Origin: Heterodontus francisci
Lineage: Eukaryota
Length of the DNA stretch: 64,000 nucleotides
Assembly: GCF_036365525.1 (NCBI RefSeq)
Contig: NW_027142279.1
Coordinates: forward strand, 682,001-746,000
Direction of reading: 5' to 3'
A program made the position numbers and the translations under genes. Below are positions 16,952 to 62,375 of the stretch, one piece after another. Within the stretch, counting starts at the first letter, position 1. The number at the start of each line of letters is the position of its first letter. Below the pieces are notes generated by a model. The model was not told the DNA's origin. It was given only the letters and a program-made list of their open reading frames with translations, and did not search any database.

Positions 16952-16998
<47 letters not shown>

Positions 16999-27088: not shown

Positions 27089-27479
27089 CTGACTGCTCAA
27101 TTTCTGCAACCAGGTCATGGAATCATCTTGGTTAACAGCAGAGAAGGAGACCATTCGGCCCATCTTCCCCGTACTGGCTTATTTGAAAGAACTGTCCAGT
27201 TATTGCTCTTCCCCCCACCCCCCCCCCCCGCTACTTCCCCATAGCCATGCACATTGTTTCCATTCACGTGTACAATCCATTCCCTTTTGAACGTTCTTGT
27301 TCAAACTGCTTCCAACACCCTTTCAGACAGTGCTCGCCACATCATAACAACTCGCTGCTTAAATAAATCATCACTTCTCCCCCCCTCTCCCCATTAATTC
27401 ATCTGCCAGTTATATTTATTCAATGTCTCTGGGTTGCCTTCTGCCTATAGAAACAGTTTCTGTCATTTACATATTTTAA

Positions 27480-35311: not shown

Positions 35312-35860
35312 GAGAAAAAGATAGATAGATAGAGAGATGGAAAGGTAGATAGATAGTTGGATGGATGGATGGATGGATGGATGGATGGATGGATAGGTAG
35401 ATAGATAGATAGGGACGTAGATAGATAGGGAGGTAAATAGATAGAGATATAGACAGATAGGTAGAGAGATAGAAAGGTAGATAGATAGATGGATGGATGG
35501 ATGGATGGATGGATGGATGGATGGATGGATGGATGGATGGATGGATGGATAGGCAGATAGATAGATAGATAGGGACGTAGATAGATAGGGAGGTAAATAG
35601 ATAGAGATATAGACAGATAGGTAGAGAGATAGAAAGGTAGATAGATGGATGGATGGATGGATGGATGGATGGATGGATGGATGGATAGATGGATGGATAG
35701 GTAGATAGATAGATAGATAGGGACGTAGATAGATAGGGAGGTAAATAGATAGAGATATAGACAGATAGGTAGAGAGATAGAAAGGTAGATAGATAGATGG
35801 ATGGATGGATGGATGGATGGATGGATGGATGGATGGATGAATGGATGGATGGATGGATAT
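35312..35860. repeat. (GGAT)n/(AGAT)n compound microsatellite with higher-order repeats
   Basis: Directly visible. Confidence 0.92.
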
Positions 35861-36983
35861 GGTGTGGTTTGATTTCACTGCATTTTCTTTCTCCAAAGGG
35901 ACAGCAGAGTGCGCTGTAGGACCATGATAAACATTCGAGTCTGGAACACACTTTAACAGTGACCTGGGAACACAAAGAGTTCATTCATCACCTCGAAAAC
36001 AGACCGCCCTTCAATGAGATCATGACTGATCAATGGATTCCCATCGCTCCCTCTCTCTCTCTACCTCTCGCTCCATCTGTCTACATCCCTATCTCTCCCC
36101 CTCTCCCCATCTTACTCTCTCCCCCTGTCTTCATCCCTCTCTCTCCACCTCTCTCTATTCCTCCCTGTCCCTCTCTCTCCATCCCTCTCTCACCCACTAG
36201 CTGCCAAGCTGGTGTAAAACGAGAGAATGCCAATTAACATTCCTATCTTTTACAGGGGCATGGACTGTCTCTCTATCTAGCTCGCTATTTCTCTACCTCT
36301 CTGACTTTCCCTCTATCTCTCTATTTCTCTACCTCTGTATCTATCTGTCTACCTGACTGTCTCTCTATCTATCTATCTCTCTCCCTGGTTATCTATCTCT
36401 CTATCTATCTAACTCTATCTTTAGGCGATTACACTTTGTATGAACTAATTAAACATACTGTAATAATGTAATGAATGACCATCTTTTGAAGGATTTTCTA
36501 TATATTGACCAGTCGATGATGTGGTTTGTCATCAATTATCTATCAAAATCCTCTATGATCTTCAATATCTGTATCACATGTACCATTAACCTTCTGTGCT
36601 CTAAGGAGAGAAATCCTCAGCTTCTCCAGTCTCTCCACCGTAACTGAAGTCCCTCATCCCTGGTACCAGTCAGGTTAATCTCCCTCGAACCATCACTACA
36701 CAGAGGAAAACAACCCCCAATGCACAGGAACTCAATACATTCGGTGATGAAACACAGAGACCGAAAGGGTGAATCAGGGAGACATAGAGAGGAAAATTGA
36801 ATGGGACAGAGGGAGACAGAGACAGAGAGATGCACACAAACACACACACACACAGACACACACGCAGACACAGATACAGAGAGAGAAAGAGAGTGAAAGA
36901 ATGGGAGACATAAAGCTCAAAACATGCAAAGAGAGAGAGAAAGTGAGAAACAAAGAGTAAGAAAGAGAGAGGAAGGCGGATTG

Positions 36984-37042
<59 letters not shown>

Positions 37043-37218
37043 CATTGTCAACCTACTCCACTCTAACTTGTTGAGCTGGGCGTCACCATCTCTGCATCAC
37101 TTCCTAATGATTTCCCTGTTCCTCCCAATGATTTGTAAAGAGTGGGTTGGTTATTGACAACACTCATCACTCCTGCTCTCTCCCCTTTTCTGATTCAGAG
37201 GGCAGCTTAAAGTAAAAG

Positions 37219-37742
37219 GTGTATCTGTTACTGGCTCTGATAACCCTGTTTCACCGGAAGGGATTTCATTGAAAAAATAATTCTACTTAACATTTCTTTT
37301 GGATATGTTTTTATTTCTCCCATTCTCTCTTTCCTTCTCTCTTTCTCTCTCCCCACTGGACTGAAGTTCCCTGTTTACTGATCTCCTCCTCTCCCTGTCT
37401 CTTTCCCAGATGTGAACTCACAGACTATCCGCCAAACTCCCGCCGCTCTCTCCAAAGCTCCTGGGGAGCAGGTGAAGATGAAATGCACCGTGCATGGTAC
37501 CAGTAACCCTTACATATACTGGTACAGACTACACCCGGGGAAGGAGCTGCAGCTGATGTTTTATTCCCTAACTGCACAAAGGGTGAACTCAGAAGGGACG
37601 GCAGAGGGTTTCACCACTGAAAGACCAACTGACTCCGAGTTCAACCTGGAGTCCTCCAGCCTGCGGGAGAATCACTCGGCCGTGTATTTCTGTGCCTGGA
37701 GACATCACAGTGACTGAGAGATGGCGCTGTTCAACAAAAACC
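37219..37742 (+). pseudogene. TRBV: V14: family A V pseudogene
   Basis: Start codon is GTG and leader donor is GG. V exon 37410-37705 open. RSS spacer 21 bp. Confidence 0.9.
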
Positions 37743-38334
37743 CCAAAGGCAGCAGAAAACACCTGTGGAGGGAAAAACCGTTCGGTGCCTCGACCTACTG
37801 TTCGCTTATGCAGAGTGAAAGTGTTTGTTACAATAATAAGAGTTGAGTTATGATTGTAGTGACACACTAGATTTACAGGTACTGCCGAGGGTGCAATGAA
37901 CGATTAATAAAGATGTCACGAGATCTCAGAATGTAACTATCAGGAATCAATGACAATAATCTGGGTTTTTATGCACTGACCCTGTGTTTACCTTCTCCAC
38001 AGGGACAGCAGAGGGGGATCCTGGACCATGGACCGCGTAATGGCTTTGAGAAGGATTTAGTGAGAAAACTGAAAGAGCAGGAGATCATGTAGATCCAGCT
38101 TGATATACATCAACAGGACAAGGACACCCACTTCGTTGGAGAGAGAAAGAGAGTGCATGTGTGTGTGAAAGAGAGAGTGATCTAGTGAGAGAGAGAGGAG
38201 AGTGAGACGAAAAACGACAGGCAGAGTTAAAGAGACTGAGACAGAGAGGGAGACAGAGATAGAGACAATGAGGGAAAATTACTGGGATACATCTGGAGAA
38301 TGAAGGATTATTTTTGGGATTGATCTGGGAGATT

Positions 38335-40968
38335 GAATGGGGTCAGTGAGTGGAGTCAATGAGTGGAGTCAGTGAGTGGGATCAGTGTGTGGGGTCAGTG
38401 AGTGAGGTCACTAAGTGGGGTCAGTGAGCGGAAGCAGTAAGTGGAGTCAGTGAGTGGAGTCAGTGTGCATAGGCAGTGAGTGGAGTCTGTACGTGGAGGA
38501 GTGAGTGGGGTCAGTGAGCGGGGACAGTGAGTTGATGTAGTGGTGGAGTCAATGAGTGGAGTCACTGAGCGGAGGCAGTGAGTGGAGTCTGTAATTGGAG
38601 TCCATATGTGGTGTCATTGAGCTGGGACAGTGAGTGGAGGCAGTGAGTGGAGTCAGTGAGCGGATTCAGTGAGACGGGACATTGAGTGGAGGCAGCGAGT
38701 GGAGTCAGTGAGCGGAGTCAGTGAGCGGAGGCACTGAGTGGAGTCTGTGAGTGGAGTCCTTGAGTGGTGTCTGTGAGTGGGGATGGTGAGTGGAGTCAGT
38801 GAGCAGGGTTAGTGAGCGGGGTTGGTGAGCGGTGCCAGTGGGGAGTCAGTGAGTGGGATCAGTAACTGGGGTCAGTGAGCGGGGTTAGTGAGTTGGTTCA
38901 GTGCGTGGGGTCAGTGCGTGGAGTCAGTGAGTGGAGTCACTGAGTGATGTCACTCAGTGGAGTCAGTGAGTGAGGTCAGTGAGTGGAGTCAGTGTGTGGA
39001 GTCACTGAGTGGTGTCACTCAGTGAAGTCAGTGAGTGAGGTCAGTGAGTGGAGTCAGTGTGCGGGGTTAGTGAGCGGGGTCAGTGCGTGCGGACAGTGAC
39101 TGGAGTCAGTGAGTGGAGTCACTGAGTGGAGTCACTGAGTGGAGTCACTGAGTGGAGTCAGTGAGCGGGGTTAGTGAGCGGGGTCAGTGCGTGCGGTCGG
39201 TGACTGGAGTCAGTGAGTGGAGTCACTGAGTGGTGTCACTCAGTGGAGTCAGTGAGTGAGGTCCGTGAGTGGAGTCAGTGAGCGGGGTTAGTGAGTGGGT
39301 TCAGTGCGTGGGGTCAGTGCGTGGAGTCAGTGAGTGGAGTCACTGAGTGATGTCACTCAGTGGAGTCAGTGAGTGAGGTCAGTGATGGAGTCAGTGAGCG
39401 GGGACAGTAAGTGGAGTCAGTGAGCCGGGTTAGTGAGCGGGGTTAGTGAGTGGCATCAGCGAGTGGGGTCAGTGACCGGGTTACTGAGCGGGGTCAGTGC
39501 GTGCGGTCAGTGACTGGAGTCAGTGAGTGGAGTCAGTCAGTGGAGTCACTCAGTGGAGTCAGTGAGTGAGGTCAGTGAGTGGAGACAGTCAATGGTGTCA
39601 GTGAGTGGAGTCAGTGAGTGGGGTCAGTGAGTATGGATAGTGAGTGGAGTCAGTGGGTTGGGTCAGTGAGAGGAGTCAGTGAGTGGTATATGTGAGTGGG
39701 GTCAGTGAGTGATGACAGTGAGTGGAGTCAGTGAGTGGGGTCAGTGAGTGGGGTCAGTGGAGTCAGTGAGTGGGGTCAAAGAGAGGAGTCAGTGACTGGT
39801 GTCAGTGGGTGGGGTCAGTGAGAGGAGTCATTGAATGGGGCCAGTGAGTGGGGTCAGTGAGTGGAGTCAGTGAGTGGTGTCAGTGAGTGGGGTCAGTGTG
39901 TGGGGACAGATGAGTGGAGTCAGTGAGTGGGGTCAATGAGTGGGGTCAGTGAGCGGGGTCAGTGAGAGGGGTCAGTGAGTGGGGTCAGTGAGTGGGGACA
40001 GTGAGTGGGGACAGTCAGCGGAGTCAGTGAGTGGAGGCATTGAGTGGAGTCTGTGAGTGGAGTCCGTGAGTGGTGTCAGTGATCGGGGACAGTGAGTGGA
40101 GTCAGTGAGCAGGGTTAGTGAGCGGGGTCAGTGAGCGGGGTCAGTGGGGAGTCAGTGAGTGGGATCAGTAAGTGGGGTCAGTGAGTGGGGACAGTGAGTG
40201 GAGTCAGTGAACGGGATTAGTGAGCGGGGCTAGTGAGCGGGGTCAGTGAGTGTGGTCAGTGACCGGGGTTAGAGAGAGAGGACAGTGCGTGCGGTCAGTG
40301 ACTGGAGTCAGTGAGTGGAGTCACTCAGTGGAGTCACTCAGTGGAGTCAGTGAGTAGGGTCAGTGAGTGGGGTCAGTGAGTTTAGACAGTGAGTGGAGTC
40401 TGTGAGTGGTGTCAGTGAGTGGCGTCAGTGAGTGGGGTCAGTGAGTGTGGACAGTGAGTGGAGTCAGTGAGTTGAGTCAGTGAGAGGAGTCATTGAGTGG
40501 TGTCAGTGAGTGGGGTCAGTGAGTGGGGACAGTGAGTGGAGTCAATGAGTGGGGTCAGTGAGTGGTGTCAGTGAGTGGGGTCAAAGAGAGGAGTCAGTGA
40601 CTGGTGTCAGTGGTTGGGGTCAGTGAGAGGAGTCTGTGAGTGGGGTCAGTGAGTGGGGTCAGTGAGTGGAGTCTGTGAGTGGGGTCAGTGAGTGGGGTCA
40701 GTGAGTGTGGACAGTGAGTGGAGTCACTGAGTGGGGTCAGTGAGAGGAGTCAGTGAGTGGTGTTAGTAAGTGGGGTCAGTGAGTGGGGACAGTCAGTGGA
40801 GTCAGTGAGTGGGGTCAGTGAGTGGGGTCAGTGAGCGGGGTCAGTGAGAGGGGTCAGTGAGTGGGGTCAGTGCGAGAGGACAGTGAGTGGAGTCAGTGAG
40901 AGAGGACAGTGAGTGGAGTCACTGAGTGGTGTCAGTGAGCGGGGTCAGTGAGAGGAGTCAGTGAGTGG
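38335..40968 (+). repeat. 13-bp G-rich satellite (GGAGTCAGTGAGT / GGGGTCAGTGAGT), >2.6 kb, running into a gap
   Basis: Roughly 200 diverged units, directly visible. Confidence 0.95.
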
Positions 40969-43019
40969 NNNNNNNNNNNNNNNNNNNNNNNNNNNNNNNN
41001 NNNNNNNNNNNNNNNNNNNNNNNNNNNNNNNNNNNNNNNNNNNNNNNNNNNNNNNNNNNNNNNNNNNNNNNNNNNNNNNNNNNNNNNNNNNNNNNNNNNN
41101 NNNNNNNNNNNNNNNNNNNNNNNNNNNNNNNNNNNNNNNNNNNNNNNNNNNNNNNNNNNNNNNNNNNNNNNNNNNNNNNNNTCTATCTATTGTTCCATTT
41201 GTCTATCCATCCATCGCTCTATCGATCCCTCCAGCTATCGATATATATCTCTATTTATCTATTTATCTCTATTCACTCTGAAATCGATATATATTTGTCA
41301 TCGATCGACTTATCTGACTCTTATCTGTCTAAGTGTATATTCATCCCTCTGTTGTTTATCATATATCTAACGTCATTGTTTACATCTCGCAGTTACATCA
41401 GTGATATATCATGATTTGCTATTTTGTTGATATTGTTGCATCTTCTTGTTCTCCTTCGATTCAGATTATATCAATACAATATTAATGGTTAAAATGCTCC
41501 ATCCATGTGATAAGGCTCTTTTCGTGAAGGTAGCCTCTACATTTTAAGAACAGATTACAAGGCAGGGTAAATGGGTTCACGATACAATTGAAAGAATGGA
41601 CGGAGGATTCTGACAAGGAGTTGTTCATAGCTCCCTATTCTACATGCCCCTGATGATTCATACAATGCAAATACGAGACAACTCCCCAGATAGGTCTCTC
41701 ACTGGAACAGATTCCTAATTTGGCGGTTTTGAGCAACTGTTGACAATTGTTAACCAACTTGTCTTTCAGACATTCGGTGTCTTTTGAACAACTTTTAAAG
41801 CATCTGAGAGTTCGGCCCAGGCAAGAATTTAACCCTTCAATTCTCGTTTAGGAGACAGGGAAAATAAGTATTTCTCTGACTAAAACAAACAAGCCCCTTG
41901 ATGCATCTTCGATAGTTATTGAATCATTCAGCACTGACCAAAGTCATTCGATCAATCGAGCCTGGGCTGGCTGTTCGAAACAGTTACCCAAAATAAACAA
42001 CATCATCCCTTGGCCATGGGCTGCAAGAAGTACAGAATCTGTTACAAACTGCTGGATTGCACATGAACTAAAGTAACCTGAGCTCAGACACTGGCCTGTG
42101 CTGGTGAAAACCAGTTTGAACTAATTAATTTATGTGACAGACAAGGGAGAAATCACAGGAATAGAGCCTTATTTGGAAACGGTGTGATACCAGCGTCTTT
42201 GGGCCTGGGCCAATAAGGACAAGATACGAACGAGGTGAGCAGGCCTAAACCAACAGGAAAGAGACAGCACAGATTTGAAGAGATAAGAAAGAGAATAAGT
42301 ATGGAGAGTCTCAGGCATAGAGCCAGCGAGAAACTCCAGAGACCAACCATCGTGGAAGTGGAAGACCCTGCGTGAGCAACACGGTGACGACGTCAAAGAG
42401 AGAGAGATCAGAACGTCTGGCCAGCATCAGCTCTCCCCTTTCCGGGAATTATCGTTTGTTTTCTGTGACGAGGTCAGGGAAAGGTCAGAGGAACCTCGTG
42501 GGTGTGCTTGTCAATTCTAGCTAGCTTTGTTATTAACTGTATAACCCAATTTGAGTTGCATGCTTTTGTCTAACCAAGTGTATAAGCCTTATTCTTACAT
42601 TGTACAACAACGTGAACAAAGTAACTTGGCAGTTAAAGAAAGGACTGAGTTTTCTCCTCTTTCTACTAAGCCATTAACTGTCGCTGGTGGATTAGGTGGA
42701 GGGTGGCTCTCCTGTAACCCCAATATCCCAAACACCCAGCCTGAGTCTGAATTAAGAGGACGAAGTCCCACGTAACGGCCAGGATTAAGTGGGTGAAGGA
42801 AATAAAGGGGCCAAGGGGGAGTTGACTCCGCGCCATGGTTTACAATCCTGTTCCCATCTCTCTGCATCTCAGCCCATCAGCACCTCCTTCTATTCCTTAC
42901 TCCCTCATGTCCTGATCTAATCTCCCCCTTAAATGCATCTCCACTATTGGCCTTAACTTACTCGCTGTGGTCGTGAAATTGAGCCCCCTGGTTCTAGACT
43001 TCTCAACCACAGAATCACA

Positions 43020-44730
43020 GAATTGTTACAGTGCAGAAGGAGGTCATTCGGCCCACCGTGCCCGCACTGTCTCTCTGGAAGAGAAATTCCCTCAGTCCCA
43101 CTCCCCTGCCTTCTCCCCATAACCCTGCACATCCTTCCTTTCCATATAACTGTCTAATTCGCTCTTGAATGCTTCAATTGAACCTGCCTCCACCACGTTC
43201 TCAGGCAGTGCATTCTGGACCTTCACCACTCGCTGTGTGAAAAAGTTCTCCCTCATGTCACTTTTGCTTCCCTTACCAAATACTTTAAATCTGTGCCCTC
43301 TCGATCCTTTCACGAGTGGGAAAAGTTTCTCTCCATCTACTCTGTCCAGATCCCTCATGATTTGGAAAACCACCATCAAATCACCTCTCAGCCTTCTCTT
43401 CTCCAAGTAAAACTGTCCCAACCCGTCCTTCCACTCTTAATGACTGAAATAAATATACACCTTGGCCCCTGTGCTCCTGCACCCCCTTTCGAGTTGTGCC
43501 CTTTATTCTCTGTTGTTCATCCGACCAAAATGAATCACTTCACATTTCTCTGCATTGAACCTCATCTCCACCTGTCTGCCCATTCCACCAACTTGTTTCT
43601 GTCCTTTTCAAGTTTGACATTATCCTCCTCATAGTTCACAATACTTCCAAGTTTCGTATCATCGGCAAACTTTGAAACTGTGCCCTGTACACCGAGGTCT
43701 AGGTCATTAATATATATCAGGAAAAGCAAAGGTCCTAATAATGATCCCTGGGGAACTCCACTACAAAACTTCCTCCAGCCCGAAAAACCATCCATTAACC
43801 ATTGCTCTTTGTTTTCTGTCACTAAACCAATTTCGTATCCATGTTGATATCGTCCCTTTTATTCCACGAGTTACAAGTTTTCTCACAGGTTTGTTGTGTG
43901 GCATTGTATCAAACGCCTTTTGAAAGTCCATGTATACCACATCCACAGCATTGCCCTCATCAACCCTCTCTGTTGCCTTCTCAAAAAAATTCCAGCAGGT
44001 TAGTTAAACATGATTTTCCCTTATGGAATCCATGCTGTCTTTCATTAATTAACTCGTCCATGTGACTATTGATTTTGTCCCGAATTATTTTTTCTAGAAG
44101 TTTCCCTACCACCAAAGTTAAACTGGCCTGTAGTTGCTGGGCTTATCTTTCCCCCTTTTTTGAATAAGGGTGTAACGTTTGAAATTCTCCAGTCCTCTGG
44201 CACCAGCCCTGAGTCTAAGGAAGACTGAAAAATTATGGCCAACGCCTCTGCGATTTCCATCCTCACTTCCCTCATCTCATCTGGTGCTGGTGCTTTATCC
44301 ACTTTCTGGTCAGACAGCCAATCTAATACTTTCTCTGCACCCATTTTAAACACTCTAGTGTCTGAATTACCTTCTCTTTCAACCAGAGGAAGCTTCTTAC
44401 CTGCATCTCCCCTGTCTATCCCTTTAAGGACTTTGTAGGTTTCAATGAGATCACCTCTCATTCTTCGAAACTCTAGAGAATACAGGCCCATTTTCCCAAA
44501 TCTCTCTTCATAGGACAGACCCGCCATCCCGGGAACATGTCGGATGATCCTTCTTAGCACTCCCTCTATGGGAATAATATCCTTCCGAAGGTCAGGGGAC
44601 CAAAACTGCACACAGCACTCCAGGTGCGGTCTAACCATGGTTCTGTGCAATTGAAGCAAGACTTCACTACTCCTGTACTCAAATCCTCTTGGGATAAAGG
44701 CTAACATAACATTAACCTTCCTAATTGCCT
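43020..44730 (-). mobile_element. Degenerate, nested CR1 LINE fragments
   Basis: Broken RT peptides ([34 protein letters not shown]) across several frames. Confidence 0.85.
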
Positions 44731-45593
44731 GTTGATGCTATATGTGAAGTTTCTACCTTCTGAAGCTCCTGCCAGGGGATATCATTTCTCCCTAACTACT
44801 CTATCGAACGGCTGTACCTCCAGGGTTAAAACATCCCATTAGCTTGCTCTGATCCAGGAAAACTGTCCCAGCGTCTCCAGTCTCTCCACATAACAACCGT
44901 CTCTCAACCATGGCACCATTCTGGTAAATGTCTCTTGAACCGTCCCTGGTCCAAGGGTAACAATGGCTTAGTTGCAATGTCACTGCGATAATAAGCCAGA
45001 GGCCTAGGCTGATGCCCAGTTTACACGGGTTCAGGCACCGGCACACCCAGTGCAACTTAAACCTGCCAATGGCCCAGTAATGTGCATAGCCCTGCTGCAG
45101 AATAGGTAAGGAGCCCAGTGCCACACAGATGGTGTTGCACCTACTTGCCTCAGGCCAGTGCTGCTTACAACGTTTGCCAGGAGACACACGGCATCGACCT
45201 CTGGCTATTCGGGGATGAAGGTGTGGATAATCTGGAATCCAGATGTCTATAAATTGGAAATCTACATGTGGCTAATGTGGGAATGCCGATAAGGCTCGTT
45301 GGGAATCTGGATATGTTCAATTGGAGAATTCTAATCAGTAAATTAAAAATTGAGTAACAGGCACCCTTGTTGGGGATGTTAACAACACTTACTCCAGTCA
45401 CTCAACCATCAGAAGCAACCACGTCCATTCTGATTGGTTGGGTGGTGGAAGGGGGCGTGTCCAACACTGCATCACTTCCTCATGCTCTTCATATTTTCCT
45501 CAATGATTTGTCAAGAGCAGGTTTGGACCCTCACAAGGCTTACACTCTGGTTCTCGCTGCTTTGCTTACTTCGAGAACAGCTTCAAGGGGAAG

Positions 45594-46087
45594 ATGTATC
45601 AGTCATTGGCTCTGATAATCCTTTTTCACTGTGAGTGAGTCTGAAATACCAACATTTTCTCTCATAACCTTCCTTTACTCATTCCCCCTTCCTTTTAATT
45701 TCCTAGAAATCCCCTGTTTACTGAACTCTTCCTCTTCCCCACACTCTCCCAGGTGTGAACTCGCAGACTATCCTCCAGACTCCTGCCGCTGTCTCCAGAG
45801 TTGTGGGGGAGGAAGTGGAACTGAAGTGCACTGTGGAGGGGAGCAGTACTCTTCCCTTGATCTGGTACAGACTATACCCGGGGAAGGAGCCTCAGGTTAT
45901 GTTTTACTCCACGGGTACTAATCACAAAAGTCCAGAGAAGGCGGTGGACGGTTTCACTGCCGAGAGACCAACTAGCACCCAGTTCAACCTGGAGTCCACC
46001 AGCCTGCGGGAGAATCACTCGGCCGTGTATTTCTGTGCCTGGAGTCTTCACAGTGACTCAGAGAGCTGGAGCAGGTCAACAAAAACC
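45594..46087 (+). CDS. TRBV: V15: family A V gene, leader 45594-45630, V exon 45753-46048, consensus 23-RSS; last intact V before D
   Basis: Open frame with Cys/Trp/Cys. CACAGTG 46049-46055, ACAAAAACC 46079-46087. Confidence 0.92.
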
Positions 46088-52730: not shown

Positions 52731-52931
52731 CTTATACAGGGAGAAGAAGATTACAATATGGAGGAGAGAAAGTGTTTATGGAAACAGGAGACCTCCAATG
52801 GGATAATAACTCGGAAAAGGGAAGGACACGTGATTAAAAGGGAAATTTGAAGTGAGAGATAAAGGGACAGAAAATGAGAGAGAGAGAGAGAGGGGGGGAG
52901 AGGTTTTATTGAACTGCTTTGTAACATCGTG

Positions 52932-52945
52932 GGAGGTCAGTACAG
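52932..52945 (+). other. TRBD: Candidate D segment GGAGGTCAGTACAG with 5' 12-RSS and 3' 23-RSS
   Basis: 5': TTTTATTGA-12bp(actgctttgtaa)-CATCGTG (heptamer 52925-52931). 3': CACCGTG 52946-52952, 23 bp, GCAGGAACT 52976-52984. Both nonamers are degenerate. Open in all three frames; ~270 bp upstream of J. Confidence 0.7.
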
Positions 52946-53213
52946 CACCGTGTTACATTCCTGTGCTCACCCCGTGCAGGAACTCCACCGTCTGCTTGCC
53001 CTTCTCACAGTCTACCCGACTGCCTGCCCCAGTGCCCAGGATCTCCCCACCCCTGCAGCATGCGCCTGCACTGTCAGGACAGGCAGGAGCAGACTGAATC
53101 CTGAGTTGACCATCTCATGGGGCACATGCCCCCTGAAGAGATAGCAAACTGCCCAGGCAAGGCGAGAGGCTTGCTGGGGGAGGGGGGTTTCAATGGTGGG
53201 TTCACTCTCTGTG

Positions 53214-53262
53214 GTGAACGATCCATCTACCTTCGGAGGGAGGACCCGACTCGCCGTTCTGG
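53214..53262 (+). other. TRBJ: J segment VNDPSTFGGRTRLAVL with 12-RSS (FGXG motif altered to FGGR)
   Basis: GGTTTCAAT 53186-53194, 12-bp spacer, CTCTGTG 53207-53213; phase-1 donor ctgg|gtatgt. Confidence 0.85.
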
Positions 53263-53668
53263 GTATGTAATGCTCGAGTCCCGGTGCTGGAGGTTGAGTT
53301 GGGGAGCAAAAGGAGCCGGTACACACCATAATATCTCTGAGTTTACCGTGTCTGAGCAGATGGAATCTTATTATTGTGTTGGAAGAGGCCATTTGATCAT
53401 TGTGCCTCTTTGGTGCAGAGAGGGGGAAATAAACAGAAAGGGAAAGCAACAGAAACAGGGAAATAAGCAGAGAAAAATGTGAGATAGAAAAAATGGCGAG
53501 AAAAAATGGAAGAAGAGAGAGAAAGATGCAGAAAGAGAGGGAAAGAAACAGAGAGAGCGGGAAAGAAACACCGAGAGAGTGATGATAGAGATAGATGGAA
53601 AGAAACAGAGAGAAAGAGAGAGGGAAGAGAGAGAGAGAAAGAAACGGAGAGAAAAAATAAACAGAAAC

Positions 53669-53699
<31 letters not shown>

Positions 53700-54984
53700 C
53701 TGCAGGCAGTAGAGAGGCAGACAGAAAGCCAGTGAGAGAAACACAGGGAGAGAATCACAAATTGAGAGAGAAACACTCCGAGGGGGAATGAGAGACAGAG
53801 AGAGAGATAGTTTCAGAGAGAGAGAGAGAGTGATTTAGAGAGAGAGGGAGAGATTCAGAGAGAGAGGCAGAGAGAGAGAGAGAGAGTGGGAGCGATTCAG
53901 AGGGAGGGGGTGTGTTTCAGAGAGAGAGAGAGATTTAGAGACAGAGAGAGAGCAATTCAGAGAGAGAGAGGCAGAGGGAGAGAGAGTGGGGGCGATTCAG
54001 AGCGGGGTGTGTGTTTCAGAGAGAGAGAGAGAGAGATTTAGAGAGAGAGAGAGCAATTCAGAGAGAGAGGGAGAGATTCAGGGAGAGAGGGAGAGAACCC
54101 AAGAGAGAGAGGGGGAGAGATTCAGAGAGAGAGGGAGAGATTCAGGGAGAGAGGGAGAGAACCCAAGAGAGAGAGGGGTAGAGATTCAGAGAGAGAGAGT
54201 GGGAGCGATTCAGAGAGAGAGGGAGAGATTCAGGGAGAGAGGGAGAGAATCAGAGAGGGAGAGATTTACTGAGATTGAGAGAGGAAAGGAGAGAGAGATT
54301 CAGGTAGAGGGAGAGAGAGAGAGAGATTCGGGCAGAGAGAGCAGTACAATTCTGGACCATTGACCATGGTGCCAGAGTTGGCTTCTTTCTACAGCTGTCT
54401 GATTGATCCCAGTTCCTTCCCACCCTATCGCTATCGACCTGTAATTCCTTCCCTTCAGCAGTTGACCCAATTCTCTTTGTAATACTATGAGTGAATCCCT
54501 CCGCCCTTTCAGGCAATGCATTCCACATCACAACAGCTCACTGCTTTGTGTCACGGGAAACAGTTTCGCCTCATTTACTCTGTCAAAACCATGACCGATT
54601 GCAAACGTCTCTGCTAAATCTCCCCTGAACTTTCTCTTCAGGAGAACAATCCCAGCTCCTCCAGTCTCTCCACATTAACTGAAGTCTCTCATCCTTTGTG
54701 TCATCTTGTGTGAACTCACTTTATTTCTCTTTCGTTAAAGCTTTCCGCCACTAAGTTCCTCATCCTCTTTATTTCTTATCCTTTACTCTCTCTCTACATA
54801 CCCTCTTCATTTTCCCTGTTGTTTGTCTCTGCTTGCCCCCTCTCTACTTGTTACCTTGTTTCTGTTCGATCATCGACCTCTCCCTCGCTTTCCTACAAGC
54901 TCCGGTTCTAAGTCTGCTTTTCTCTCAGTCCTGGAGGTAGTGTTGCCCTGGATGATAGACTTGCAGCTCTGGACTGGGACTCGG

Positions 54985-56430
54985 GCAACCTCCTCCAGCC
55001 CCTACCACCCTCCCTATCTCTGTAACATCCTCCAGCCCCTACAGCCCTGCCTAACACTGTGACCTCCGACAGCTCATATACCCCTCCCTATTTCTGTAAC
55101 ATCCTCCAGCCACTGCACCCTCCCTATCTCTGTAACATCCATCAGCACCCCACATCCATCCCTGTCTCTGCAACATCCTCCAGCCCCTGCACCCTCCCTA
55201 TCTCTGTAACATCCTTCAACCCCTACACCACTCCCTATCTCTGTAACCTCCTTCAGCTCCTATACCCCTCCCCATCTCTGTAACATCATCCAGTCCCTAC
55301 AGCCCTCCCTATCTCTGTAACATCCTCCAGACCCGATAGCCCTCCCTATCTCAGTTACCTCCTCCAGCATCTACACCCCTCTCTATCTCTGTCACATCCT
55401 CCAGCCACTACTGCCCTCCCTATCTCTGTAACATACTCGAGACCCTATAGCCCTCCATATCTCTGTTACCTCCTTCAGCACACACAACCATCCCTATCTT
55501 TGTAAACCCTTCCAGCCCCCTACACCCCTCCCTATCTCTGTAACATCCTCCAGCCCCCCACACCGCTACCTATGTCTGTAACTTCCTCCAGCACCCGACA
55601 CCCCTTCCTATCTCTGTAACATTCTCCAGGCCCTACACCCCTCCCTAGCTCTGTAACCTCCTTCAGCCCCTACACCCCTCCTGATGTCTGTAACATTGTT
55701 CGGCACCCACAGCCCTGCCTATCTCTGTAACATCCTCCAGCACCTACAGCCCTCCCTATCTCTGTTACCTCCTCCAGACCCTACACCCCTCCCTATCTCT
55801 GTAACATCCTCCAGCACCTACAGGCCTCCCTATCTCTGTAACCTCCTTCAGCTCCTACACCGCTCCTGATGTCTGTAACATTGTTCGGCACCCACAGCCC
55901 TGCCTATCTCTGTAACATCCTCCAGCACCTACAGCCCTCCCTATCTCTGTTACCTCCTCCAGCCCCTACACCCCTCCCTATCTCTGTAACCTGCTTCAGC
56001 CCCTACATCCCTCCCTATCTCTGTTACCTCCTCCAGACCCTACACCCCTCCCTATCTCTGTAACCTCCTCCAGCCCCCTACAACCCTGCCGAACTCTATA
56101 ACCTCCTCCAGCCACTACCATCCTTTCTATCTCTGTCACCTCCTCCAGCCCCCTACACCCTCCCTATCTCTGTAACCTCCTTCAGCCTCTACAACCCTCC
56201 CTATCTCTGTAACCTCATGCAGCCCCCACACCCCTCCCTATCTCTGTAACCTCCTCCAGCACCCTACACCCCTCCCAACTCTGTGATCTCCTACAGCCGC
56301 CTACACGCCTCCCTATATCTGAAACCCCTCCAGCCCCTCCAACCCTCTTTATCTCTGTAACCTCCTCCAGCCCCAACAACCCTCCCTATCTCTGTAACGT
56401 CCTCCAGCGCCCTGCTCCCTATCTCTGTTC
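54985..56430 (+). repeat. ~37-bp C-rich minisatellite in the J-C intron
   Basis: Unit ccctccctatctctgtaacctcctccagcccctacac, about 38 diverged copies. Confidence 0.92.
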
Positions 56431-56670
56431 TGATATCACATCCTTTATAATAGTCTCTATCATTTTACCCACTACTGATGTAAGGCTAACTGGTCTGTAA
56501 TTCTCTGTTTTTTCCCTCCCTCCTTTCTTTTATAGAGTCTACAACAAACTGTTGATGTTGTGGTGAAGGAGAATGAACGCTGGGGTAAGCACACTCCCCC
56601 CCCCACCCCCACTCGCCACCCCCCCTTCCATCCCCATCGTTCCTAACACTCATGTTTCGCTCTCCCAGAG

Positions 56671-57007
56671 AGGCAGACCAAGAGGTTAAGCATCCCACCA
56701 TGACCGTTTTTGAGCCATCGGACGAAGAAATCAGGGCCCTAAGAAAGCCACCTTTGTCTGCCTGGCCAGTGGCTTCTTCCCGGACTACGTGAAGTTCTCC
56801 TGGACAGGGGGGCAACGAGGAGATCGAGACGAAGGATGTGCTGACTGACAGGCGGGTAAAGGATGATGCTGGCCGCTACAGCGTGGACCAGTAGGTTGTA
56901 GGTTCCCATGGCCGAATGGGCCCGCAAGCAGTATTCCTGCAAAGTGACCCATTACAGTAAAGACGGCGCAGAGATTTCTCAAGATGCCAAGATCAGCAGC
57001 AAGACAG
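56671..57007 (+). pseudogene. TRBC: TCR beta-like constant exon 1 (Ig C1 domain), disrupted
   Basis: Reconstructed EADQEVKHPTMTVFEPSDEEIRA/KKATFVCLASGFFPDYVKFSWTG/GNEEIETKDVLTDRRVKDDAGRYSV/TSRL*VPMAEWARKQYSCKVTHYSKDGAEISQDAKISSKT. Frameshifts at ~56740, ~56810, ~56886; TAG at 56899; extra AG at the acceptor; donor g|gtgagt. Confidence 0.92.
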
Positions 57008-57396
57008 GTGAGTGTCTGCAATGCCTGGAATCACCTCTGCTTCTCCCGAGCCCAAAGCAAGGAAGCTATACTGAACCTTTATCAATACAATGTTACAGCC
57101 GAGAGGGAGGATGTGAAGGTGTTAGAGAGGGTGCACAAAATATTCACGACAAAGGTTCCAGGGATGAAGGAATTCAGTTAGGTGGATAGCTTGGGAAAGT
57201 CTACATCATAGGTGAGACTTAAGAACACTGGAAGAGGCCGAGGCGATTCAGCCGTTGAAGCTTGTTCCACTATTCTGTTGCATAAAGATTCATCGCGACA
57301 ATTACTCTATTTGACGCCTCGGCTCAGTAACCATCAATAACCTGATGTTCACCCAAATGGTTCACCACTCAGAGACAGAGAGTGAGGGAAAAAGAT

Positions 57397-57427
<31 letters not shown>

Positions 57428-58300
57428 CCGAGACCGAGAAAGAGAGAGAGAGAGAGAGAGAAGGAGAGAGAGAGAGAAATAGAGAAAGAGACACACAGAA
57501 AGAGAAAGGGAGAGAGACAGACAGGGAGATAGAGACAGAGAGTGACACAGAGACAGACAGACAGTGNNNNNNNNNNNNNNNNNNNNNNNNNNNNNNNNNN
57601 NNNNNNNNNNNNNNNNNNNNNNNNNNNNNNNNNNNNNNNNNNNNNNNNNNNNNNNNNNNNNNNNNNNNNNNNNNNNNNNNNNNNNNNNNNNNNNNNNNNA
57701 AAGAGAACGNNNNNNNNNNNNNNNNNNNNNNNNNNNNNNNNNNNNNNNNNNNNNNNNNNNNNNNNNNNNNNNNNNNNNNNNNNNNNNNNNNNNNNNNNNN
57801 NNNNNNNNNNNNNNNNNNNNNNNNNNNNNNNNNNNNNNNNNNNNNNNNNNNNNNNNNNNNNNNNNNNNNNNNNNNNNNNNNNNNNNNNNNNNNNNNNNNN
57901 NNNNNNNNNNNNNNNNNNNNNNNNNNNNNNNNNNNNNNNNNNNNNNNNNNNNNNNNNNNNNNNNNNNNCAGAGAGAGCGACGGAGATAGAGCGTGACACA
58001 CAGAGAGACATGGAAACAAAAACAGAGAGAAAAGGAGAACGAGAGAGAAAGAGTCAGACAGACAGAGAAAGACAGACAGAGACAGTGAGAGATACACAGA
58101 CAGAGAGAAAGAGAGAAAGACAGAGACAGAGGGAGGCAGAGAGACACAAAGAGAGAGAGAGAGGGAAACTGGGAGAAGACAGAGATTGAGAAAGACAGAC
58201 AGAGAGTGACAGGGACTGAGAAACAGAAACAGAGAGAAAGAGAGGCAGAGACAGGGAGAGACAGAGACAGAAAGACAGAGAGACAAAGAGAAAGAGAAAC

Positions 58301-58339
<39 letters not shown>

Positions 58340-58726
58340 GAGAGGCACACACACACAGACAAGGACAGACAGAGAAAGAGAGACAGAGAGAGAGAGACAG
58401 AGAGACAAGGAGAGAAGGAGAGCCAGAGCCAGAGAGAGAGACAGAGACAGGAAGAGAAAGAGAGGCAGAGAGACAACGGGAAAGACAGAGACAGTGAGTG
58501 AGAGAGAGAGGCAGAGAAAGACAGAAACAGAGAGACAGAGACAAAGACAGAGAGAAATGGAGCGAAAGAGAGAGACAGAGACAGAGAGAGAGACACGTAC
58601 AGAGAGAGACACATGGTCAAAGAGAGAGAGACTGAGAGAGAGACACAGAAAGAGAGAGAGAGAGAGAGAGGAAAGGAAAGAGAGAGACATAGAGAGAGAA
58701 AGGCAGGGAGACAGTGGGAAAGACAG

Positions 58727-58767
<41 letters not shown>

Positions 58768-59414
58768 TACACAGAGAGACAGAGAAACAGAGACAGAGAG
58801 AAAAGGACNNNNNNNNNNNNNNNNNNNNNNNNNNNNNNNNNNNNNNNNNNNNNNNNNNNNNNNNNNNNNNNNNNNNNNNNNNNNNNNNNNNNNNNNNNNN
58901 NNNNNNNNNNNNNNNNNNNNNNNNNNNNNNNNNNNNNNNNNNNNNNNNNNNNNNNNNNNNNNNNNNNNNNNNNNNNNNNNNNNNNNNNNNNNNNNNNNNN
59001 NNNNNNNNNNNNNNNNNNNNNGAGAGTGACGGAGATAGAGTGTGACACGCAGAGAGACATGGAAACAAATACAGAGAGAAAAGGAGAACGAGAGAGAGAG
59101 AGACAGACAGACAGAGAAAGACAGACAGAGAAAGACAGACAGAGAAAGNNNNNNNNNNNNNNNNNNNNNNNNNNNNNNNNNNNNNNNNNNNNNNNNNNNN
59201 NNNNNNNNNNNNNNNNNNNNNNNNNNNNNNNNNNNNNNNNNNNNNNNNNNNNNNNNNNNNNNNNNNNNNNNNNNNNNNNNNNNNNNNNNNNNNNNNNNNN
59301 NNNNCCAATCTCTGTGCAGAGAATTTTCCCCCGATTTATGTTCTTGCTGTGATATGAAAACTGTGATTTATGCACAAATAATTGAAGTTTTTTCCTCTTT
59401 TTGATTTCTTGCAG

Positions 59415-59432
59415 GCCTCTGTGAAGGGAATG
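59415..59432 (+). pseudogene. TRBC: C exon 2 (18-bp connecting peptide, GLCEGN, interchain Cys)
   Basis: ttcttgcag|gcctctgtgaagggaatg|gtgaga; size and phase (1/1) as in TRBC exon 2. Confidence 0.8.
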
Positions 59433-59595
59433 GTGAGAACGTTCAATATTTTATCAGTTTGCTATGATCTGTCTTTGTCTCTCTCTCTCTCACACTCTCG
59501 CTCTCTCATGCACATACACACACTTACGGAATGTACATAATGATTAAGTTGGATTTTAGGGCCAGTGACTATGGTCTTTCTTGTTTGTCTTTCAG

Positions 59596-59705
59596 TGGAG
59601 CGGATACAGAGGCAACAGATTGTGGCAAGAGCTACTTACACTTTACTCATCTCCAAGAGCTTCCTGTATATGGCAAAGATCACCATCGTGCTGCTCAAGC
59701 GGAAG
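59596..59705 (+). pseudogene. TRBC: C exon 3 (transmembrane) VERIQRQQIVARATYTLLISKSFLYMAKITIVLLKRK
   Basis: tttcag|...aag|gtatga. YxxLxxKxxLY antigen-receptor TM motif with the CD3-pairing Lys; phase 1 to 0. Confidence 0.88.
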
Positions 59706-59799
59706 GTATGAGAATTACTAGGACATTTTGCTGACGTGTAAAACGGACCCCCTTCTCTATTCTGTAAACTTCAATCCTCTCCAGGTTTTCAGGCATCAG

Positions 59800-60078
59800 T
59801 GATGCACATTCCCCGCACTGCCTGTGCGGAGTTTGCAAGTTCTCCCTGTGTCTGCGTGGGTTTTCGCCGGGTGCTCCGGTTTCCTCCCACATCCAAAGAC
59901 TTGCAGGTGATAGGTAAAATGGCCGTTGTAAATTGCTCCTCATGTAGGGAGGTGATCGGGAATATGGGATTACTGGAGGGTTATTATAAGTGGGTGGTTG
60001 TTGGTCGGCACAGACTCGGTGGGCCGAAGGGACTGTTTTGGTGCTGTATCTCTAAATAAATAAAAAAATAAATAAATA
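59800..60078 (+). mobile_element. V-SINE (HE1-like) copy
   Basis: V-domain core ttctccctgtgtctgcgtgggtttt..ccggtttcctcccacatccaaagac, CR1-like 3' end and (AAAT)n tail. Confidence 0.8.
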
Positions 60079-60679
60079 GGGTGAATCACTGAACCCAGTC
60101 CATGTCATTGTGCATGTGATTCGACAGTGAAACCAGACTGTCTATTAGCACCACTGTGTCGACTGAAATCCATCTAGATCCTGCACCAAGGGGTCCTGAA
60201 TCTCCCCCACCCTCTCACATGAGGACAGAGTGAGCGATAGAGAAGGAGAAAGAGAGAGACGTAACTAGAGAGTAATAGAGAGAATGTGAAGGTGGGGGGG
60301 GGGAGGGACAGAGAGCGAGAAAGAAAAAAACAGAGAGAGAGAGACAGAAAGAGAGACAAAGAGATAGAGTGACAGAACCAGTGAGGGAAATGCTGAGAGA
60401 GTTGGAGAGAGTGAGAGAAAGGGATAGCTAGAGATAAATTGTGTTTGTGTGTGAGAGAGTGAGAGATAGAGAGAGAGAGAAATAGATAAATATAGAGAGT
60501 GACAGATATAGAGAGAGAGAGTCAGGGGAGATAAAATGAGAGAGAAGGGCATATCGACAGAAACAAAGTGAAATTGACATCCGAGGGATAAACAGAGAGT
60601 GAGAGAGTGTGTCTGTATTACATATATAAAGAGAGAAAGAGTTTGGGGTAATGAAAGAGAGACAGAGTGAGAAAGGAAG

Positions 60680-61350
60680 TGTCACTGAAAGTGGCAACGC
60701 AGGTGGAAAAGATAGTCAAGAAGGCACACGACATGCTTGCCTTCATCGGTCGGGGCATAGAGCATAAAAATTGGCAAGTCATGCTGCTGCTGTACAGAAC
60801 CTTAGTTAGGCCACACTTAGATTATTGCTTGCAATTCTGGTCGCCACACTACCAGAAGGACGGGCAGGCTTTGGAGAGGGTACAGAGGAGGTTTACCAGG
60901 ATGTTGCCTGATCTGGAGGGCATTAGCTATGAGGAGAGGTTGGATAAACTCGGATTGTTTTCACTGGAACGACGGAGGTGGAGGGGCGACATGATAGAGG
61001 TTTACAAAGTTATAAGTGGCATGGACAGAGTGGATCGTCAGAAGCTTTTTCCCAGGGTGGAAGAGTCAGTTACTGGGGGACATAGGTTTAAGGTGAGAAG
61101 GCCAAAGTTTAGAGGGGATGTGCGAGGCAAGCTCTTTACGCAGAGGGTGGTGAGTGCCTGGAACTTGATGCCAGGGGAGGTCGTGGAAGCAGGTACGATA
61201 GCGACGTTTAAGAGGCATCTTGACAAATATATGAATAGGAAGGGAATAGAGGGATACGGTCCCCGGAAGTGCAGAACGTTTTCATTTAGGCAGGCATCAA
61301 GATCGACGCAAGCTTAGAGGGCCGAATGGCCTGTTCCTGTGCTGTACTGT
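60680..61350 (+). mobile_element. CR1 LINE 3' fragment in C intron 3
   Basis: ORF 60667-61317: LYRTLVRPHLDYCLQFWSPH..LERVQRRFTRM. Confidence 0.9.
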
Positions 61351-61953
61351 TCTTTGTTCCTTGTTCTTTGAAGATTGAGGCAGATAGAGAGAGGAAGAGA
61401 GAGAGAGAGAGAGGAGTGTTTAAGGGAGAGATAGACAGACACAGAGACACAGAGAGAGGGAGACAGGAAGAGTCAGAGGGAGAACCTAAGAGAGAGAAAT
61501 AGACAGAGAGAACATACGGGAGAGACAGTGAGAGTGGGAGGGACAGAAGGCGAGAGAGAGAGAGGAGAGTGCAAGGGAGAGACAGAGTGAGACAGAGACA
61601 CAGACAGAGAGAGAAACACATAGACAAAAAGAGAGAAAAAGAGAGACAGAGAGAGAAAGAGAGAGAGAGAGAAGCATGTATGGGAGAGAGAGAGAGCCCT
61701 ACTCCCCTACCCTTTCCTCATCACCTTGCAAAATTTACCCTTTCAAGTCTTAATCCAATTGTCCGCTTTTTCAGGCACTGCTTTCCAGATGACAACAACG
61801 CTCTGAGTTTTAAAAAGAACTCACCCTTCCCTCTGGTTCTTGTTAAATGCCATGAAATGTGTTTCCACTGACTCGAGATCCTTCCCAGGGCATTGTAGAA
61901 GAAATATTCCATGACTGACTCAATCTTTTTCCTTCCTTTTTATCGCCTTCCAG

Positions 61954-62375
61954 ATTTCAGGAAAGTTGATGAAAAGTTTCGATTAACTAAGCCGGGGCCA
62001 AAAACTCTGCAACAGGGCACTCGTCACAACATATCCTTCAGAAATATGGGAAAGGAGGAGGAGGCTATTGGGTCATATCCCTATCATTGATATGTTGTCA
62101 TTTTCTATTGGTTAGTAACAGTTCGGCATCTGGCAAAACCCATTAGGTCTTTCAGAGGAATTGGATTACAACATAATTAAAATTTATGTCTCAATTGCTA
62201 TTCAATTCATTTAACCACTTGTCAGCTGGTTAGCTGAGCTCGTTAATCTACTTTAACTAGTTGAGATGTCTCCTGTCCATCTTTGAACCGTTTGCACACT
62301 GAGCTTCATTTCTTTCAGTTGAGCTTCTTCATGAAGCACCCTTCTCTCTCTTGTGACATCAAGCAGGCTAATAAA
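61954..62375 (+). pseudogene. TRBC: C exon 4 (cytoplasmic tail ISGKLMKSFD*, 61954-61986) and 3' UTR to AATAAA 62370-62375
   Basis: Strong polypyrimidine tract + cag acceptor; phase 0 matches the end of exon 3; short tail then TAA. Confidence 0.72.

What the first reader, a model, noticed from the sequence alone, without database searches (positions are those of the whole stretch)
52904..62375. Hidden minimal D-J-C cassette completes a V(n)-D-J-C TCR-beta-like locus whose C gene is dead
Seen: one D candidate (12/23 RSS), one J (12-RSS, FGGR, phase-1 donor) and four C exons with matching splice phases, directly downstream of about 17 co-oriented V genes/relics, most with 23-RSS. Known: V23/12D23/12J geometry and the four-exon C (Ig, 18-bp hinge, TM, short tail) are the TRB pattern, and TRB clusters normally carry many J segments. 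Inference: this is an extra, one-D/one-J, decaying TRB-type cassette that annotation would probably miss, either a second TRB locus or an ancient cassette inside the main locus.
Basis: partly seen in the sequence, partly recalled or inferred. Interest (0 to 1): 0.85.

Follow-up and report, generated by a model that had tools for sequence, protein, structure and literature searches.

The report
Dead copy of second shark C-beta cassette
Behind a row of 16 T-cell-receptor beta V genes in this shark lies a small D-J-C unit whose constant gene really is broken; it is one decayed copy of an old second beta constant gene type that catsharks and the whale shark keep intact and that this same shark still transcribes from near-identical copies.

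Summary
On the + strand lie 16 TRBV-type V exons or relics, 14 of them followed by an RSS-like signal. Then come one D-like element (52904-52984), one J (53214-53262, FGGR in place of FGxG, 12-RSS, phase-1 donor) and a four-exon TRBC-type constant gene (56671-57007, 59415-59432, 59596-59705, 61954-61986).

Exon 1 has three frameshifts and one TAG. Contigs built from the reads of two DNA runs match the window letter for letter across all four lesions, so these are not consensus errors. All four N runs lie inside C intron 1, and no gap lies between D/J and C exon 1. No second J is present.

The gene is collinear with open predicted genes in two catsharks (64-65% identity) and the whale shark (54%). 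RNA contigs from the same animal show the predicted exon 1-2-3 splicing, but every contig covering a diagnostic site differs from this copy. One has the missing base at the first frameshift.

So this copy is dead while the gene type is alive. The scan has reported the same gene type on other DNA of this genome. The find is real and fairly ordinary as a single copy; the gene type is more interesting.

The parts
92..46087 (+). Array of 16 TRBV-type V exons or relics, all co-oriented with the cassette. Positions: 92-379, 2956-3246, 5182-5472, 7007-7255 (cut by an N run), 8852-9142, 11174-11461, 13452-13734, 15748-16030, 17354-17641, 20275-20493 (partial), 23906-23971 (3' relic), 25891-26181, 29761-30051, 34525-34812, 37421-37703, 45764-46048.
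   Evidence: tblastn; translations and RSS; Pfam V-set E 1e-16. For family B the best single-domain PDB matches are TCR beta chains at 60-64 bits. About half have an open V exon. In-frame stops at 11174-11461 and 15748-16030; frameshift at 29761-30051; conserved Trp lost at 25891-26181 and 34525-34812.
52904..52984 (+). D-like element: weak 12-RSS (52904-52931), 14-nt core GGAGGTCAGTACAG (52932-52945), 23-RSS (52946-52984).
   Evidence: Only hit of this geometry in the window; 0.003 expected per shuffled window. Nonamers match only 5/9; heptamers 5/7 and 6/7. It lies 268 bp upstream of the J coding start.
53186..53262 (+). J segment: nonamer ggtttcaat, 12-nt spacer, heptamer ctctgtg (53186-53213). 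Coding 53214-53262 reads NDPSTFGGRTRLAVL plus G; donor gtatgt at 53263.
   Evidence: It aligns with the catshark J NAEQYFGEGTRLTVL (8 of 15 identical), in the place just before the C region. The second Gly of FGxG is Arg.
56536..56584 (+). 49-nt optional exon between J and C exon 1 (ttttatag|...|gtaagc).
   Evidence: One RNA contig of a near-identical copy joins a J-like end (YFGNGSGLTV) to this exon and then to 56671 (GT..AG joint). In the J frame the exon brings a stop, so that form is non-productive.
56671..57007 (+). C exon 1 (C1-set Ig domain), broken: one base missing at 56739/40, one extra G in the run 56807-56812, one extra base at 56886, TAG at 56899-56901.
   Evidence: Frames; piecewise tblastn to orthologues. 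DNA contigs 56557-56836 and 56824-56947 are identical to the window in two runs. The piece 56729-56815 gives its best single-stretch PDB matches to TCR beta chains, 29-30 bits.
57008..59414 (+). C intron 1, GA-rich repeats, containing all four N runs of the finding.
   Evidence: Orthologue proteins and RNA contigs pass from exon 1 straight to exon 2, so no exon is expected in the gaps.
59415..59432 (+). C exon 2, 18 bp hinge (G)LCEGN(G/V) with the interchain cysteine.
   Evidence: LCEGN is identical in both catsharks. The loose end of an RNA contig reads exon 2 then exon 3 letters after 57008.
59596..59705 (+). C exon 3, connecting peptide and transmembrane region (…ATYTLLISKSFLYMAKITIVLLKRK), ending in phase 0.
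   Evidence: 23 of 36 residues identical to catsharks. Lys at +6 and Tyr at +10 after the first Tyr, as in the catshark and whale shark sequences. An extra Lys (MAKIT) stands where the orthologues have Thr.
61954..62375 (+). C exon 4: ISGKLMKSFD plus stop (61954-61986), then 3' UTR up to AATAAA at 62370-62375.
   Evidence: The catshark tail is CSGKLAKHFD (7 of 10 identical).

Best explanation
This is a pseudogenised copy of a complete TRB-type V(n)-D-J-C unit built around a second, anciently diverged type of T-cell-receptor beta constant gene (here called C-beta-II).

Shown: the 23 / 12-23 / 12 RSS geometry; the four-exon TRBC layout; collinearity with open predicted C genes of catsharks and whale shark; four real lesions in C exon 1; a J without FGxG; and transcripts of near-identical copies, but none matching this copy at any diagnostic site.

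Inferred: the unit arose by segmental duplication of a larger TRB block inside the main locus, and this copy died recently. It is as similar to the catshark genes as the whale shark gene is, and it differs from an expressed copy by 2 substitutions and 1 indel in 115 bases. It can no longer give a beta chain.

Inferred from unchecked notes: the open V genes upstream may still be used by other D-J-C units, for instance by inversion to an oppositely oriented ordinary cluster beyond the window's end. In that case the weak D and J signals here would at most serve as dead-end recombination targets.
For: V array and RSS. D geometry unique in the window. J with 12-RSS and phase-1 donor. Exon structure and phases.

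Orthologues: P0002 and P0003 (Scyliorhinus torazame), P0008 (S. canicula XP_038657067.1, named 'M1-specific T cell receptor beta chain-like') and P0007 (Rhincodon typus). The window's J and all C pieces fall in the same order along them, at 64-65% identity (catsharks) and 54% (whale shark); whale shark versus catshark is 60%.

Beta type: Pfam C1-set for the orthologues; the best single-stretch PDB matches of the KKATFVCLASGFFPDYVKFSW piece are TCR beta chains; Atlas neighbours include 'T cell receptor beta constant 2'.

Lesions are in the reads: DNA contigs of runs X1 and X3 are identical to the window over 56557-56947.

Expression of other copies: RNA contigs of X5 carry an extra G after 56739 and other letters at 56723, 56753, 56963, 56970 and 57000. 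They show exon1-exon2-exon3 and exon1-exon3 joins and a J-to-C join.
Against: The DNA runs come from the same sample as the RNA and possibly from the sample the assembly was made from, so they are not an independent animal. Contigs drop rare variants, so weak transcription of this copy is not excluded. No RNA contig covered lesions 2 and 3, so full intactness of any copy in this animal is not shown. Linkage of exon 1 to exons 2-4 across the N runs is assumed. The D signals are weak (nonamers 5/9). I could not retrieve an ordinary shark C-beta, so 'second, divergent type' rests on unchecked notes of this scan plus the annotation of the catshark genes. The oppositely oriented neighbouring cluster lies outside the window and was not seen by me.
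Confidence: 0.8

Rival explanations
1. The cassette is functional, and the frameshifts and stop are assembly or consensus errors.
For: One lesion sits in a run of six G (56807-56812), a typical error site. The region is flanked by repeats and N runs.
Against: Read-derived contigs of two DNA runs (depth about 23) reproduce the window without any difference across all four lesions. The J also lacks FGxG, and the transmembrane exon has an extra Lys.
Confidence: 0.04
2. The RNA variant with the extra G is the other allele of this same locus, so the cassette is polymorphic: dead on the assembled haplotype and alive on the other.
For: RNA and DNA come from one sample. Upstream, at 56487-56586, two DNA variants of similar depth (25 and 29) exist, and the RNA matches the non-window one.
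Against: No DNA contig with the RNA's letters at 56723, 56739 or 56753 was laid, although the tool warns that holes prove nothing. Two substitutions and one indel in 115 bases is, from my own knowledge, high for alleles. Summed DNA depth of 130-185 over 56932-57027, and at least three sequence variants there, point to several paralogous copies. Other windows of this genome hold the same gene type.
Confidence: 0.12
3. The D-like element is chance and the unit is a V-J-C cassette (gamma- or light-chain-like direct joining), or the chain is not a true beta chain.
For: The D nonamers match only 5/9 and one heptamer 5/7. V 23-RSS to J 12-RSS joining is formally allowed. The transmembrane exon's only PDB hits, which are not significant, are TCR gamma (E 0.4). 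The whale shark C domain scores 48.7 bits against an Ig lambda C domain.
Against: The paired 12/23 structure is unique in 128 kb of strand, with 0.003 expected by chance, and sits just upstream of the J. The four-exon layout with an 18-bp cysteine exon is the TRBC layout (own knowledge; four-exon TRBC with its splicing frames is also described in PMC10464911). The VFEPS...EI and KKATxVCLAxGFFPD motifs match TCR beta best per domain. NCBI names the catshark gene beta-chain-like.
Confidence: 0.15

Closest known systems
Mammalian TRB locus D-J-C clusters (TRBD-TRBJ-TRBC1/2)
   Same: V with 23-RSS, D with 12- and 23-RSS, J with 12-RSS and a phase-1 donor. Four C exons: Ig domain, 18-bp hinge with Cys, transmembrane exon ending in phase 0, and a short tail.
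   Different: One J instead of 6-7 (PMC10464911). The D core differs from the G-rich mammalian D. The C type is very different from a second C type reported in this genome, whereas mammalian TRBC1 and TRBC2 are nearly identical (PMC10464911). This copy is a pseudogene.
Divergent TRBC isotypes of teleosts and axolotl (channel catfish: two TRBC at 36% identity; damselfish; salmonids about 70%), as summarised in PMC10464911
   Same: Two old, divergent beta constant gene types kept within one species' TRB locus.
   Different: Those are described and expressed isotypes of bony fish and amphibians. I found no paper in the library describing two C-beta types in sharks. Here each type is said to have its own D-J unit.
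Salmonid TRB loci: pairs of V(n)-D(1)-J(k)-C(1) loci in opposite orientation (PMC10464911)
   Same: Whole V-D-J-C units with a single D, lying in opposite orientation on one chromosome. This is the layout suggested for this region by unchecked notes.
   Different: The salmonid units carry 4-10 J and working C genes of similar type. Here there is one J and a dead C of a different type. The opposite orientation of the neighbour was not verified here.
[quoted passage not shown]
   Same: If the ordinary cluster beyond the window is on the minus strand, the 16 V genes here lie behind that C in inverted orientation, like TRBV30.
   Different: There are sixteen V genes with their own D-J-C unit, not one lone V. 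Any relationship of these V genes to TRBV30 was not tested here.

Membership tests
TRB-type V-D-J-C unit (T-cell receptor beta locus) | V segments of V-set type followed by a 23-RSS | tested here: met
   12 canonical and 2 damaged RSS after YFCA(W/C)S. Pfam V-set. For family B the best single-domain PDB matches are TCR beta chains. For family A the PDB ranking was not decisive.
TRB-type V-D-J-C unit (T-cell receptor beta locus) | D segment flanked by a 12-RSS (5') and a 23-RSS (3') | tested here: inconclusive
   The geometry is present and unique in the window, with 0.003 expected by chance. The nonamers match only 5/9, the thresholds were set post hoc, and use in junctions was not tested.
TRB-type V-D-J-C unit (T-cell receptor beta locus) | J segment with 12-RSS, FGxG motif and phase-1 donor | tested here: not met
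   The 12-RSS and phase-1 donor are present, but the motif reads FGGR. This fits a decayed J, not a working one.
TRB-type V-D-J-C unit (T-cell receptor beta locus) | Four-exon TRBC layout: C1-set exon, 18-bp Cys hinge exon, transmembrane exon with conserved Lys and Tyr, short tail exon | tested here: met
   The exon 1-2-3 joins are seen in RNA contigs of near-identical copies.
TRB-type V-D-J-C unit (T-cell receptor beta locus) | C domain of beta type rather than alpha, gamma, delta or light chain | tested here: inconclusive
   The best single-stretch PDB matches of one exon-1 piece are TCR beta. NCBI names the catshark gene beta-like, and an Atlas neighbour is 'TCR beta constant 2'. The whole-chain PDB ranking is swamped by multi-domain Ig, the transmembrane hits are not significant, and no tree was made.
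Functional TRBC gene | Open reading frame through all exons | tested here: not met
   Three frameshifts and one TAG in exon 1, present in read-derived DNA contigs.
Functional TRBC gene | Transcripts carrying this copy's own letters | tested here: not met
   Every RNA contig that overlaps a diagnostic site differs from the window. Contigs drop rare variants, so weak expression is not excluded.
Second shark C-beta type (catshark XP_038657067.1 and GCB66422.1, whale shark model) | Collinear similarity of J and all four C exons to those genes | tested here: met
   64-65% identity to the catsharks and 54% to the whale shark, with the pieces in the same order.
Second shark C-beta type (catshark XP_038657067.1 and GCB66422.1, whale shark model) | Strong divergence from the ordinary shark C-beta, and tail-to-tail position with it | not testable with these tools
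The neighbouring cluster lies beyond the window's end; only unchecked notes describe it.

The most novel reading that the evidence does not exclude
C-beta-II is a living second TCR beta isotype of elasmobranchs with its own V(n)-D-J-C translocon, lying inverted behind the ordinary D-J-C cluster in each repeat of the locus. Its V genes can join either by deletion to C-beta-II or by inversion to the ordinary cluster. This arrangement would be the ancestral state from which tetrapods kept only the lone inverted V gene (TRBV30 type).
Probability: 0.3. Interest if true: 0.7.

Novelty: new member of a known kind. Interest (0 to 1): 0.42.

Why it matters
As a single locus this is a pseudogene and changes little. 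Its value lies in three points.

First, it gives a complete, co-oriented V(n)-D-J-C example of the second beta constant gene type.

Second, reads from the same animal show that the lesions are real. They also show that this gene type is still transcribed and correctly spliced from sister copies, including a copy that has the base missing here at the first frameshift. That argues against treating the type as extinct in this species.

Third, if the type proves to be an undescribed second beta isotype shared by the window's shark, catsharks and the whale shark, then sharks join teleosts and axolotl in keeping divergent C-beta genes. The origin of the inverted V gene behind TRBC would then become testable.

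Tried and rejected

2. Retrieving an ordinary shark C-beta failed. Searches with the whale shark C and a catshark V region returned only the queries or an unrelated light chain.

3. The whole-chain PDB search with the whale shark C is dominated by multi-domain Ig heavy chains. It is not usable for chain typing.

4. The transmembrane exon against PDB gave only non-significant hits, with TCR gamma at E 0.4.

5. V family A against PDB gave a ranking dominated by scFv chains, which is not decisive.

6. I searched for more J segments with a strict FGxG scan, a relaxed motif scan and a 30-nt J end seen in RNA. None was found beyond 53214-53262.

8. Seven literature searches found no paper on two C-beta types in sharks. 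The catshark TCR paper I had in mind is not in the library.

Exons and frame pieces were searched apart, by reference. Only phases and one short RNA-observed junction were translated.

10. I did not check the species name myself. The runs are coded, and the name 'horn shark' comes from earlier notes.
Full report
**What is in the sequence**

The window carries 16 V exons or relics, all on the + strand, found by tblastn with three of the window's own V exons.
- Twelve are followed directly by CACAGTG, a 22-23 nt spacer and an ACAAAAACC-like nonamer after YFCAWSL or YFCACSI.
- Two more have damaged signals: a 17-nt spacer at 11462 and a TACAGTG heptamer at 13735.
- They are V-set domains. For one family the best single-domain matches among solved structures are TCR beta chains. 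For the other family the ranking was not decisive.
- About half have an open V exon. The others carry stops, a frameshift or a lost conserved Trp.

**The D-J unit**

- It is the only structure of that geometry on either strand of the window. Block-shuffled windows give 0.003 per window.
- The thresholds were chosen after seeing it and the nonamers match only 5/9. I call it a likely but weak D.

The J has a 12-RSS at 53186-53213 (6/9 and 6/7 matches). Its coding part, 53214-53262, reads NDPSTFGGRTRLAVL and is followed by G|gtatgt, a phase-1 donor.
- FGGR replaces FGxG.
- No other J exists in readable sequence, by strict or relaxed motif scans or by a 30-nt J end seen in RNA.
- The stretch 52638-57566, from D through C exon 1, contains no N. 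No J can be hidden in a gap between J and C.

**The C gene**

| Exon | Position | Content |
|---|---|---|
| 1 | 56671-57007 | Ig domain |
| 2 | 59415-59432 | 18 bp, (G)LCEGN |
| 3 | 59596-59705 | transmembrane, ATYTLLISKSFLYMAKITIVLLKRK |
| 4 | 61954-61986 | ISGKLMKSFD plus stop |

- AATAAA lies at 62370-62375.
- All splice sites are canonical.
- The J phase fits exon 1 if the second AG of the tandem acceptor at 56667-56670 is used. That is the acceptor seen in RNA.

Exon 1 is readable only in four frame pieces. Aligned piece by piece to the orthologues, the breaks are:
- one base missing at 56739/40;
- one extra G in the run 56807-56812;
- one extra base at 56886;
- TAG at 56899-56901, in the conserved SRLxV stretch.

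**The gaps**

All four N runs named in the finding (57567-59304) lie in intron 1 (57008-59414), inside GA-rich repeats.
- No exon touches a gap, so no reading frame depends on them.
- Catshark proteins and RNA contigs pass from the end of exon 1 straight into exon 2. No exon is expected in the gaps.
- I could not show with reads that exon 1 and exons 2-4 are physically continuous.

**Are the lesions real?**

The stretch 56420-57360 was laid on contigs of two DNA runs and two probable RNA runs, all from one sample.
- In both DNA runs a 280-base contig (56557-56836) and a 124-base contig (56824-56947), at depth about 23, match the window with no difference. Together they cover all four lesions.
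- The lesions are therefore in the reads and are not consensus errors.
- The caveat is that the sample may be the one the assembly was made from.

**Relatives**

A 36-residue open piece of exon 1 (56902-57009) was searched against 1.84 billion representatives. It found two Scyliorhinus torazame proteins at 69% identity and a 163-residue model at 56%. A follow-up search added a S. canicula protein.

| Id | Species | Accession or source |
|---|---|---|
| P0003 | Scyliorhinus torazame | GCB66422.1 |
| P0002 | Scyliorhinus torazame | unnamed NCBI protein |
| P0008 | Scyliorhinus canicula | XP_038657067.1, 'M1-specific T cell receptor beta chain-like' |
| P0007 | Rhincodon typus | EukProt model |

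(Names.)

- All have open C regions.
- The window's J and every C piece align in the same order along them. Identity is 64-65% to the catsharks and 54% to the whale shark, while whale shark versus catshark is 60%.
- The broken copy has therefore not diverged faster than an intact gene. This points to a recent death.

**Chain type**

Evidence for a beta type:
- The piece KKATFVCLASGFFPDYVKFSW has its best single-stretch matches among solved structures in TCR beta chains, at 29-30 bits.
- The orthologues carry C1-set domains.
- Atlas neighbours include 'T cell receptor beta constant 2'.
- The exon layout with an 18-bp cysteine exon is that of TRBC (own knowledge; four-exon TRBC is also described in PMC10464911).

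Uninformative or contrary results:
- The whole-chain PDB ranking is uninformative.
- The transmembrane exon gives only non-significant TCR gamma hits.
- I made no tree, because I could not obtain an ordinary shark C-beta (closed).

**Expression**

Contigs of run X5 are spliced, so they are RNA.
- One reads exon 2 then exon 3 letters after 57008. Another reads exon 3 directly after 57007, skipping exon 2. The whale shark model lacks the hinge in the same way.
- One joins a J-like end (YFGNGSGLTV) to a 49-nt exon at 56536-56584 and then to 56671. In the J frame that exon brings a stop, so this form is non-productive.

Every RNA contig that covers a diagnostic site differs from the window.
- The differences are at 56553, 56556, 56723, 56753, 56963, 56970 and 57000.
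- One contig has an extra G after 56739, which turns the broken CT into CGT (Arg). That matches the catshark EEIRQRKKAT at the first frameshift.
- At least two different sister sequences are transcribed.
- No RNA contig covered lesions 2 and 3.

Summed DNA depth rises from about 23 to 130-185 over 56932-57027, with three sequence variants. This is compatible with several near-identical copies, though the tool warns that depth is not a copy number.

**Context from the scan (unchecked notes)**

Notes place ordinary J-C-beta and D-beta elements 8.6 kb, 24.8 kb and 34.2 kb beyond the window's end. That order implies a minus-strand cluster lying tail to tail with this C.

Other windows of this genome were reported to hold decayed copies of the same second C-beta type. 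Some notes mention transcripts of near-identical copies, 30-36% identity to the ordinary C-beta, and a possible link to TRBV30.

I confirmed the catshark and whale shark orthologues and the transcripts of sister copies. I did not test the rest. The scan has therefore found this gene type before on other DNA.

**Comparison with known systems**

- Divergent TRBC genes within one species are known in channel catfish (36% identity), damselfish, salmonids and axolotl (PMC10464911).
- V-D-J-C loci in opposite orientation are known in salmonids (PMC10464911).
- An inverted V behind C in the beta and delta loci is discussed as an old feature (PMC12227049).
- Seven literature searches found no description of two C-beta types in sharks.

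**Verdict**

Two corrections apply: the cassette is one of several copies, and the gene type is alive elsewhere in the same animal.

Pieces were handled apart, by reference.

Noticed in passing
window 54987-56413: A 37-bp tandem repeat, about 38.5 copies at 78% match, fills much of the J-C intron.
   Followed up: no
window 50100-52100, 53500-54330, 57371-59148, 60240-60660, 61380-61680: Long GA-rich microsatellite blocks. All N runs from 51468 onwards lie inside or beside such blocks, so the gaps are probably repeat-caused.
   Followed up: partly
window 56536-56584: A 49-nt optional exon between J and C exon 1 is used in one RNA contig of a sister copy. It brings a stop in the J frame, so it behaves like a poison exon.
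   Followed up: partly
window 57007 to 59596 junction: RNA contigs of sister copies show an exon-2-skipping form that lacks the hinge cysteine. The whale shark gene model also lacks the hinge.
   Followed up: partly
window 59790-60060 and 60690-61330: By eye, C intron 3 holds a SINE-like element and a LINE-like open stretch on the + strand. Similar LINE-like stretches appear near 10422, 20954 (minus strand) and 43280 (minus strand) in the motif scan. Not tested against any library.
   Followed up: no
window 11174-11500 and 13452-13775: Two V genes have damaged recombination signals. One has a 17-nt spacer plus an in-frame stop. The other has TACAGTG in place of CACAGTG.
   Followed up: partly
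window 56487-56586: Two DNA variants of similar depth (25 and 29) differ by 4 letters and 1 gap. The RNA matches the non-window variant at the two sites its contig covers (56553, 56556). Whether this is an allele or a paralogue is not resolved.
   Followed up: partly
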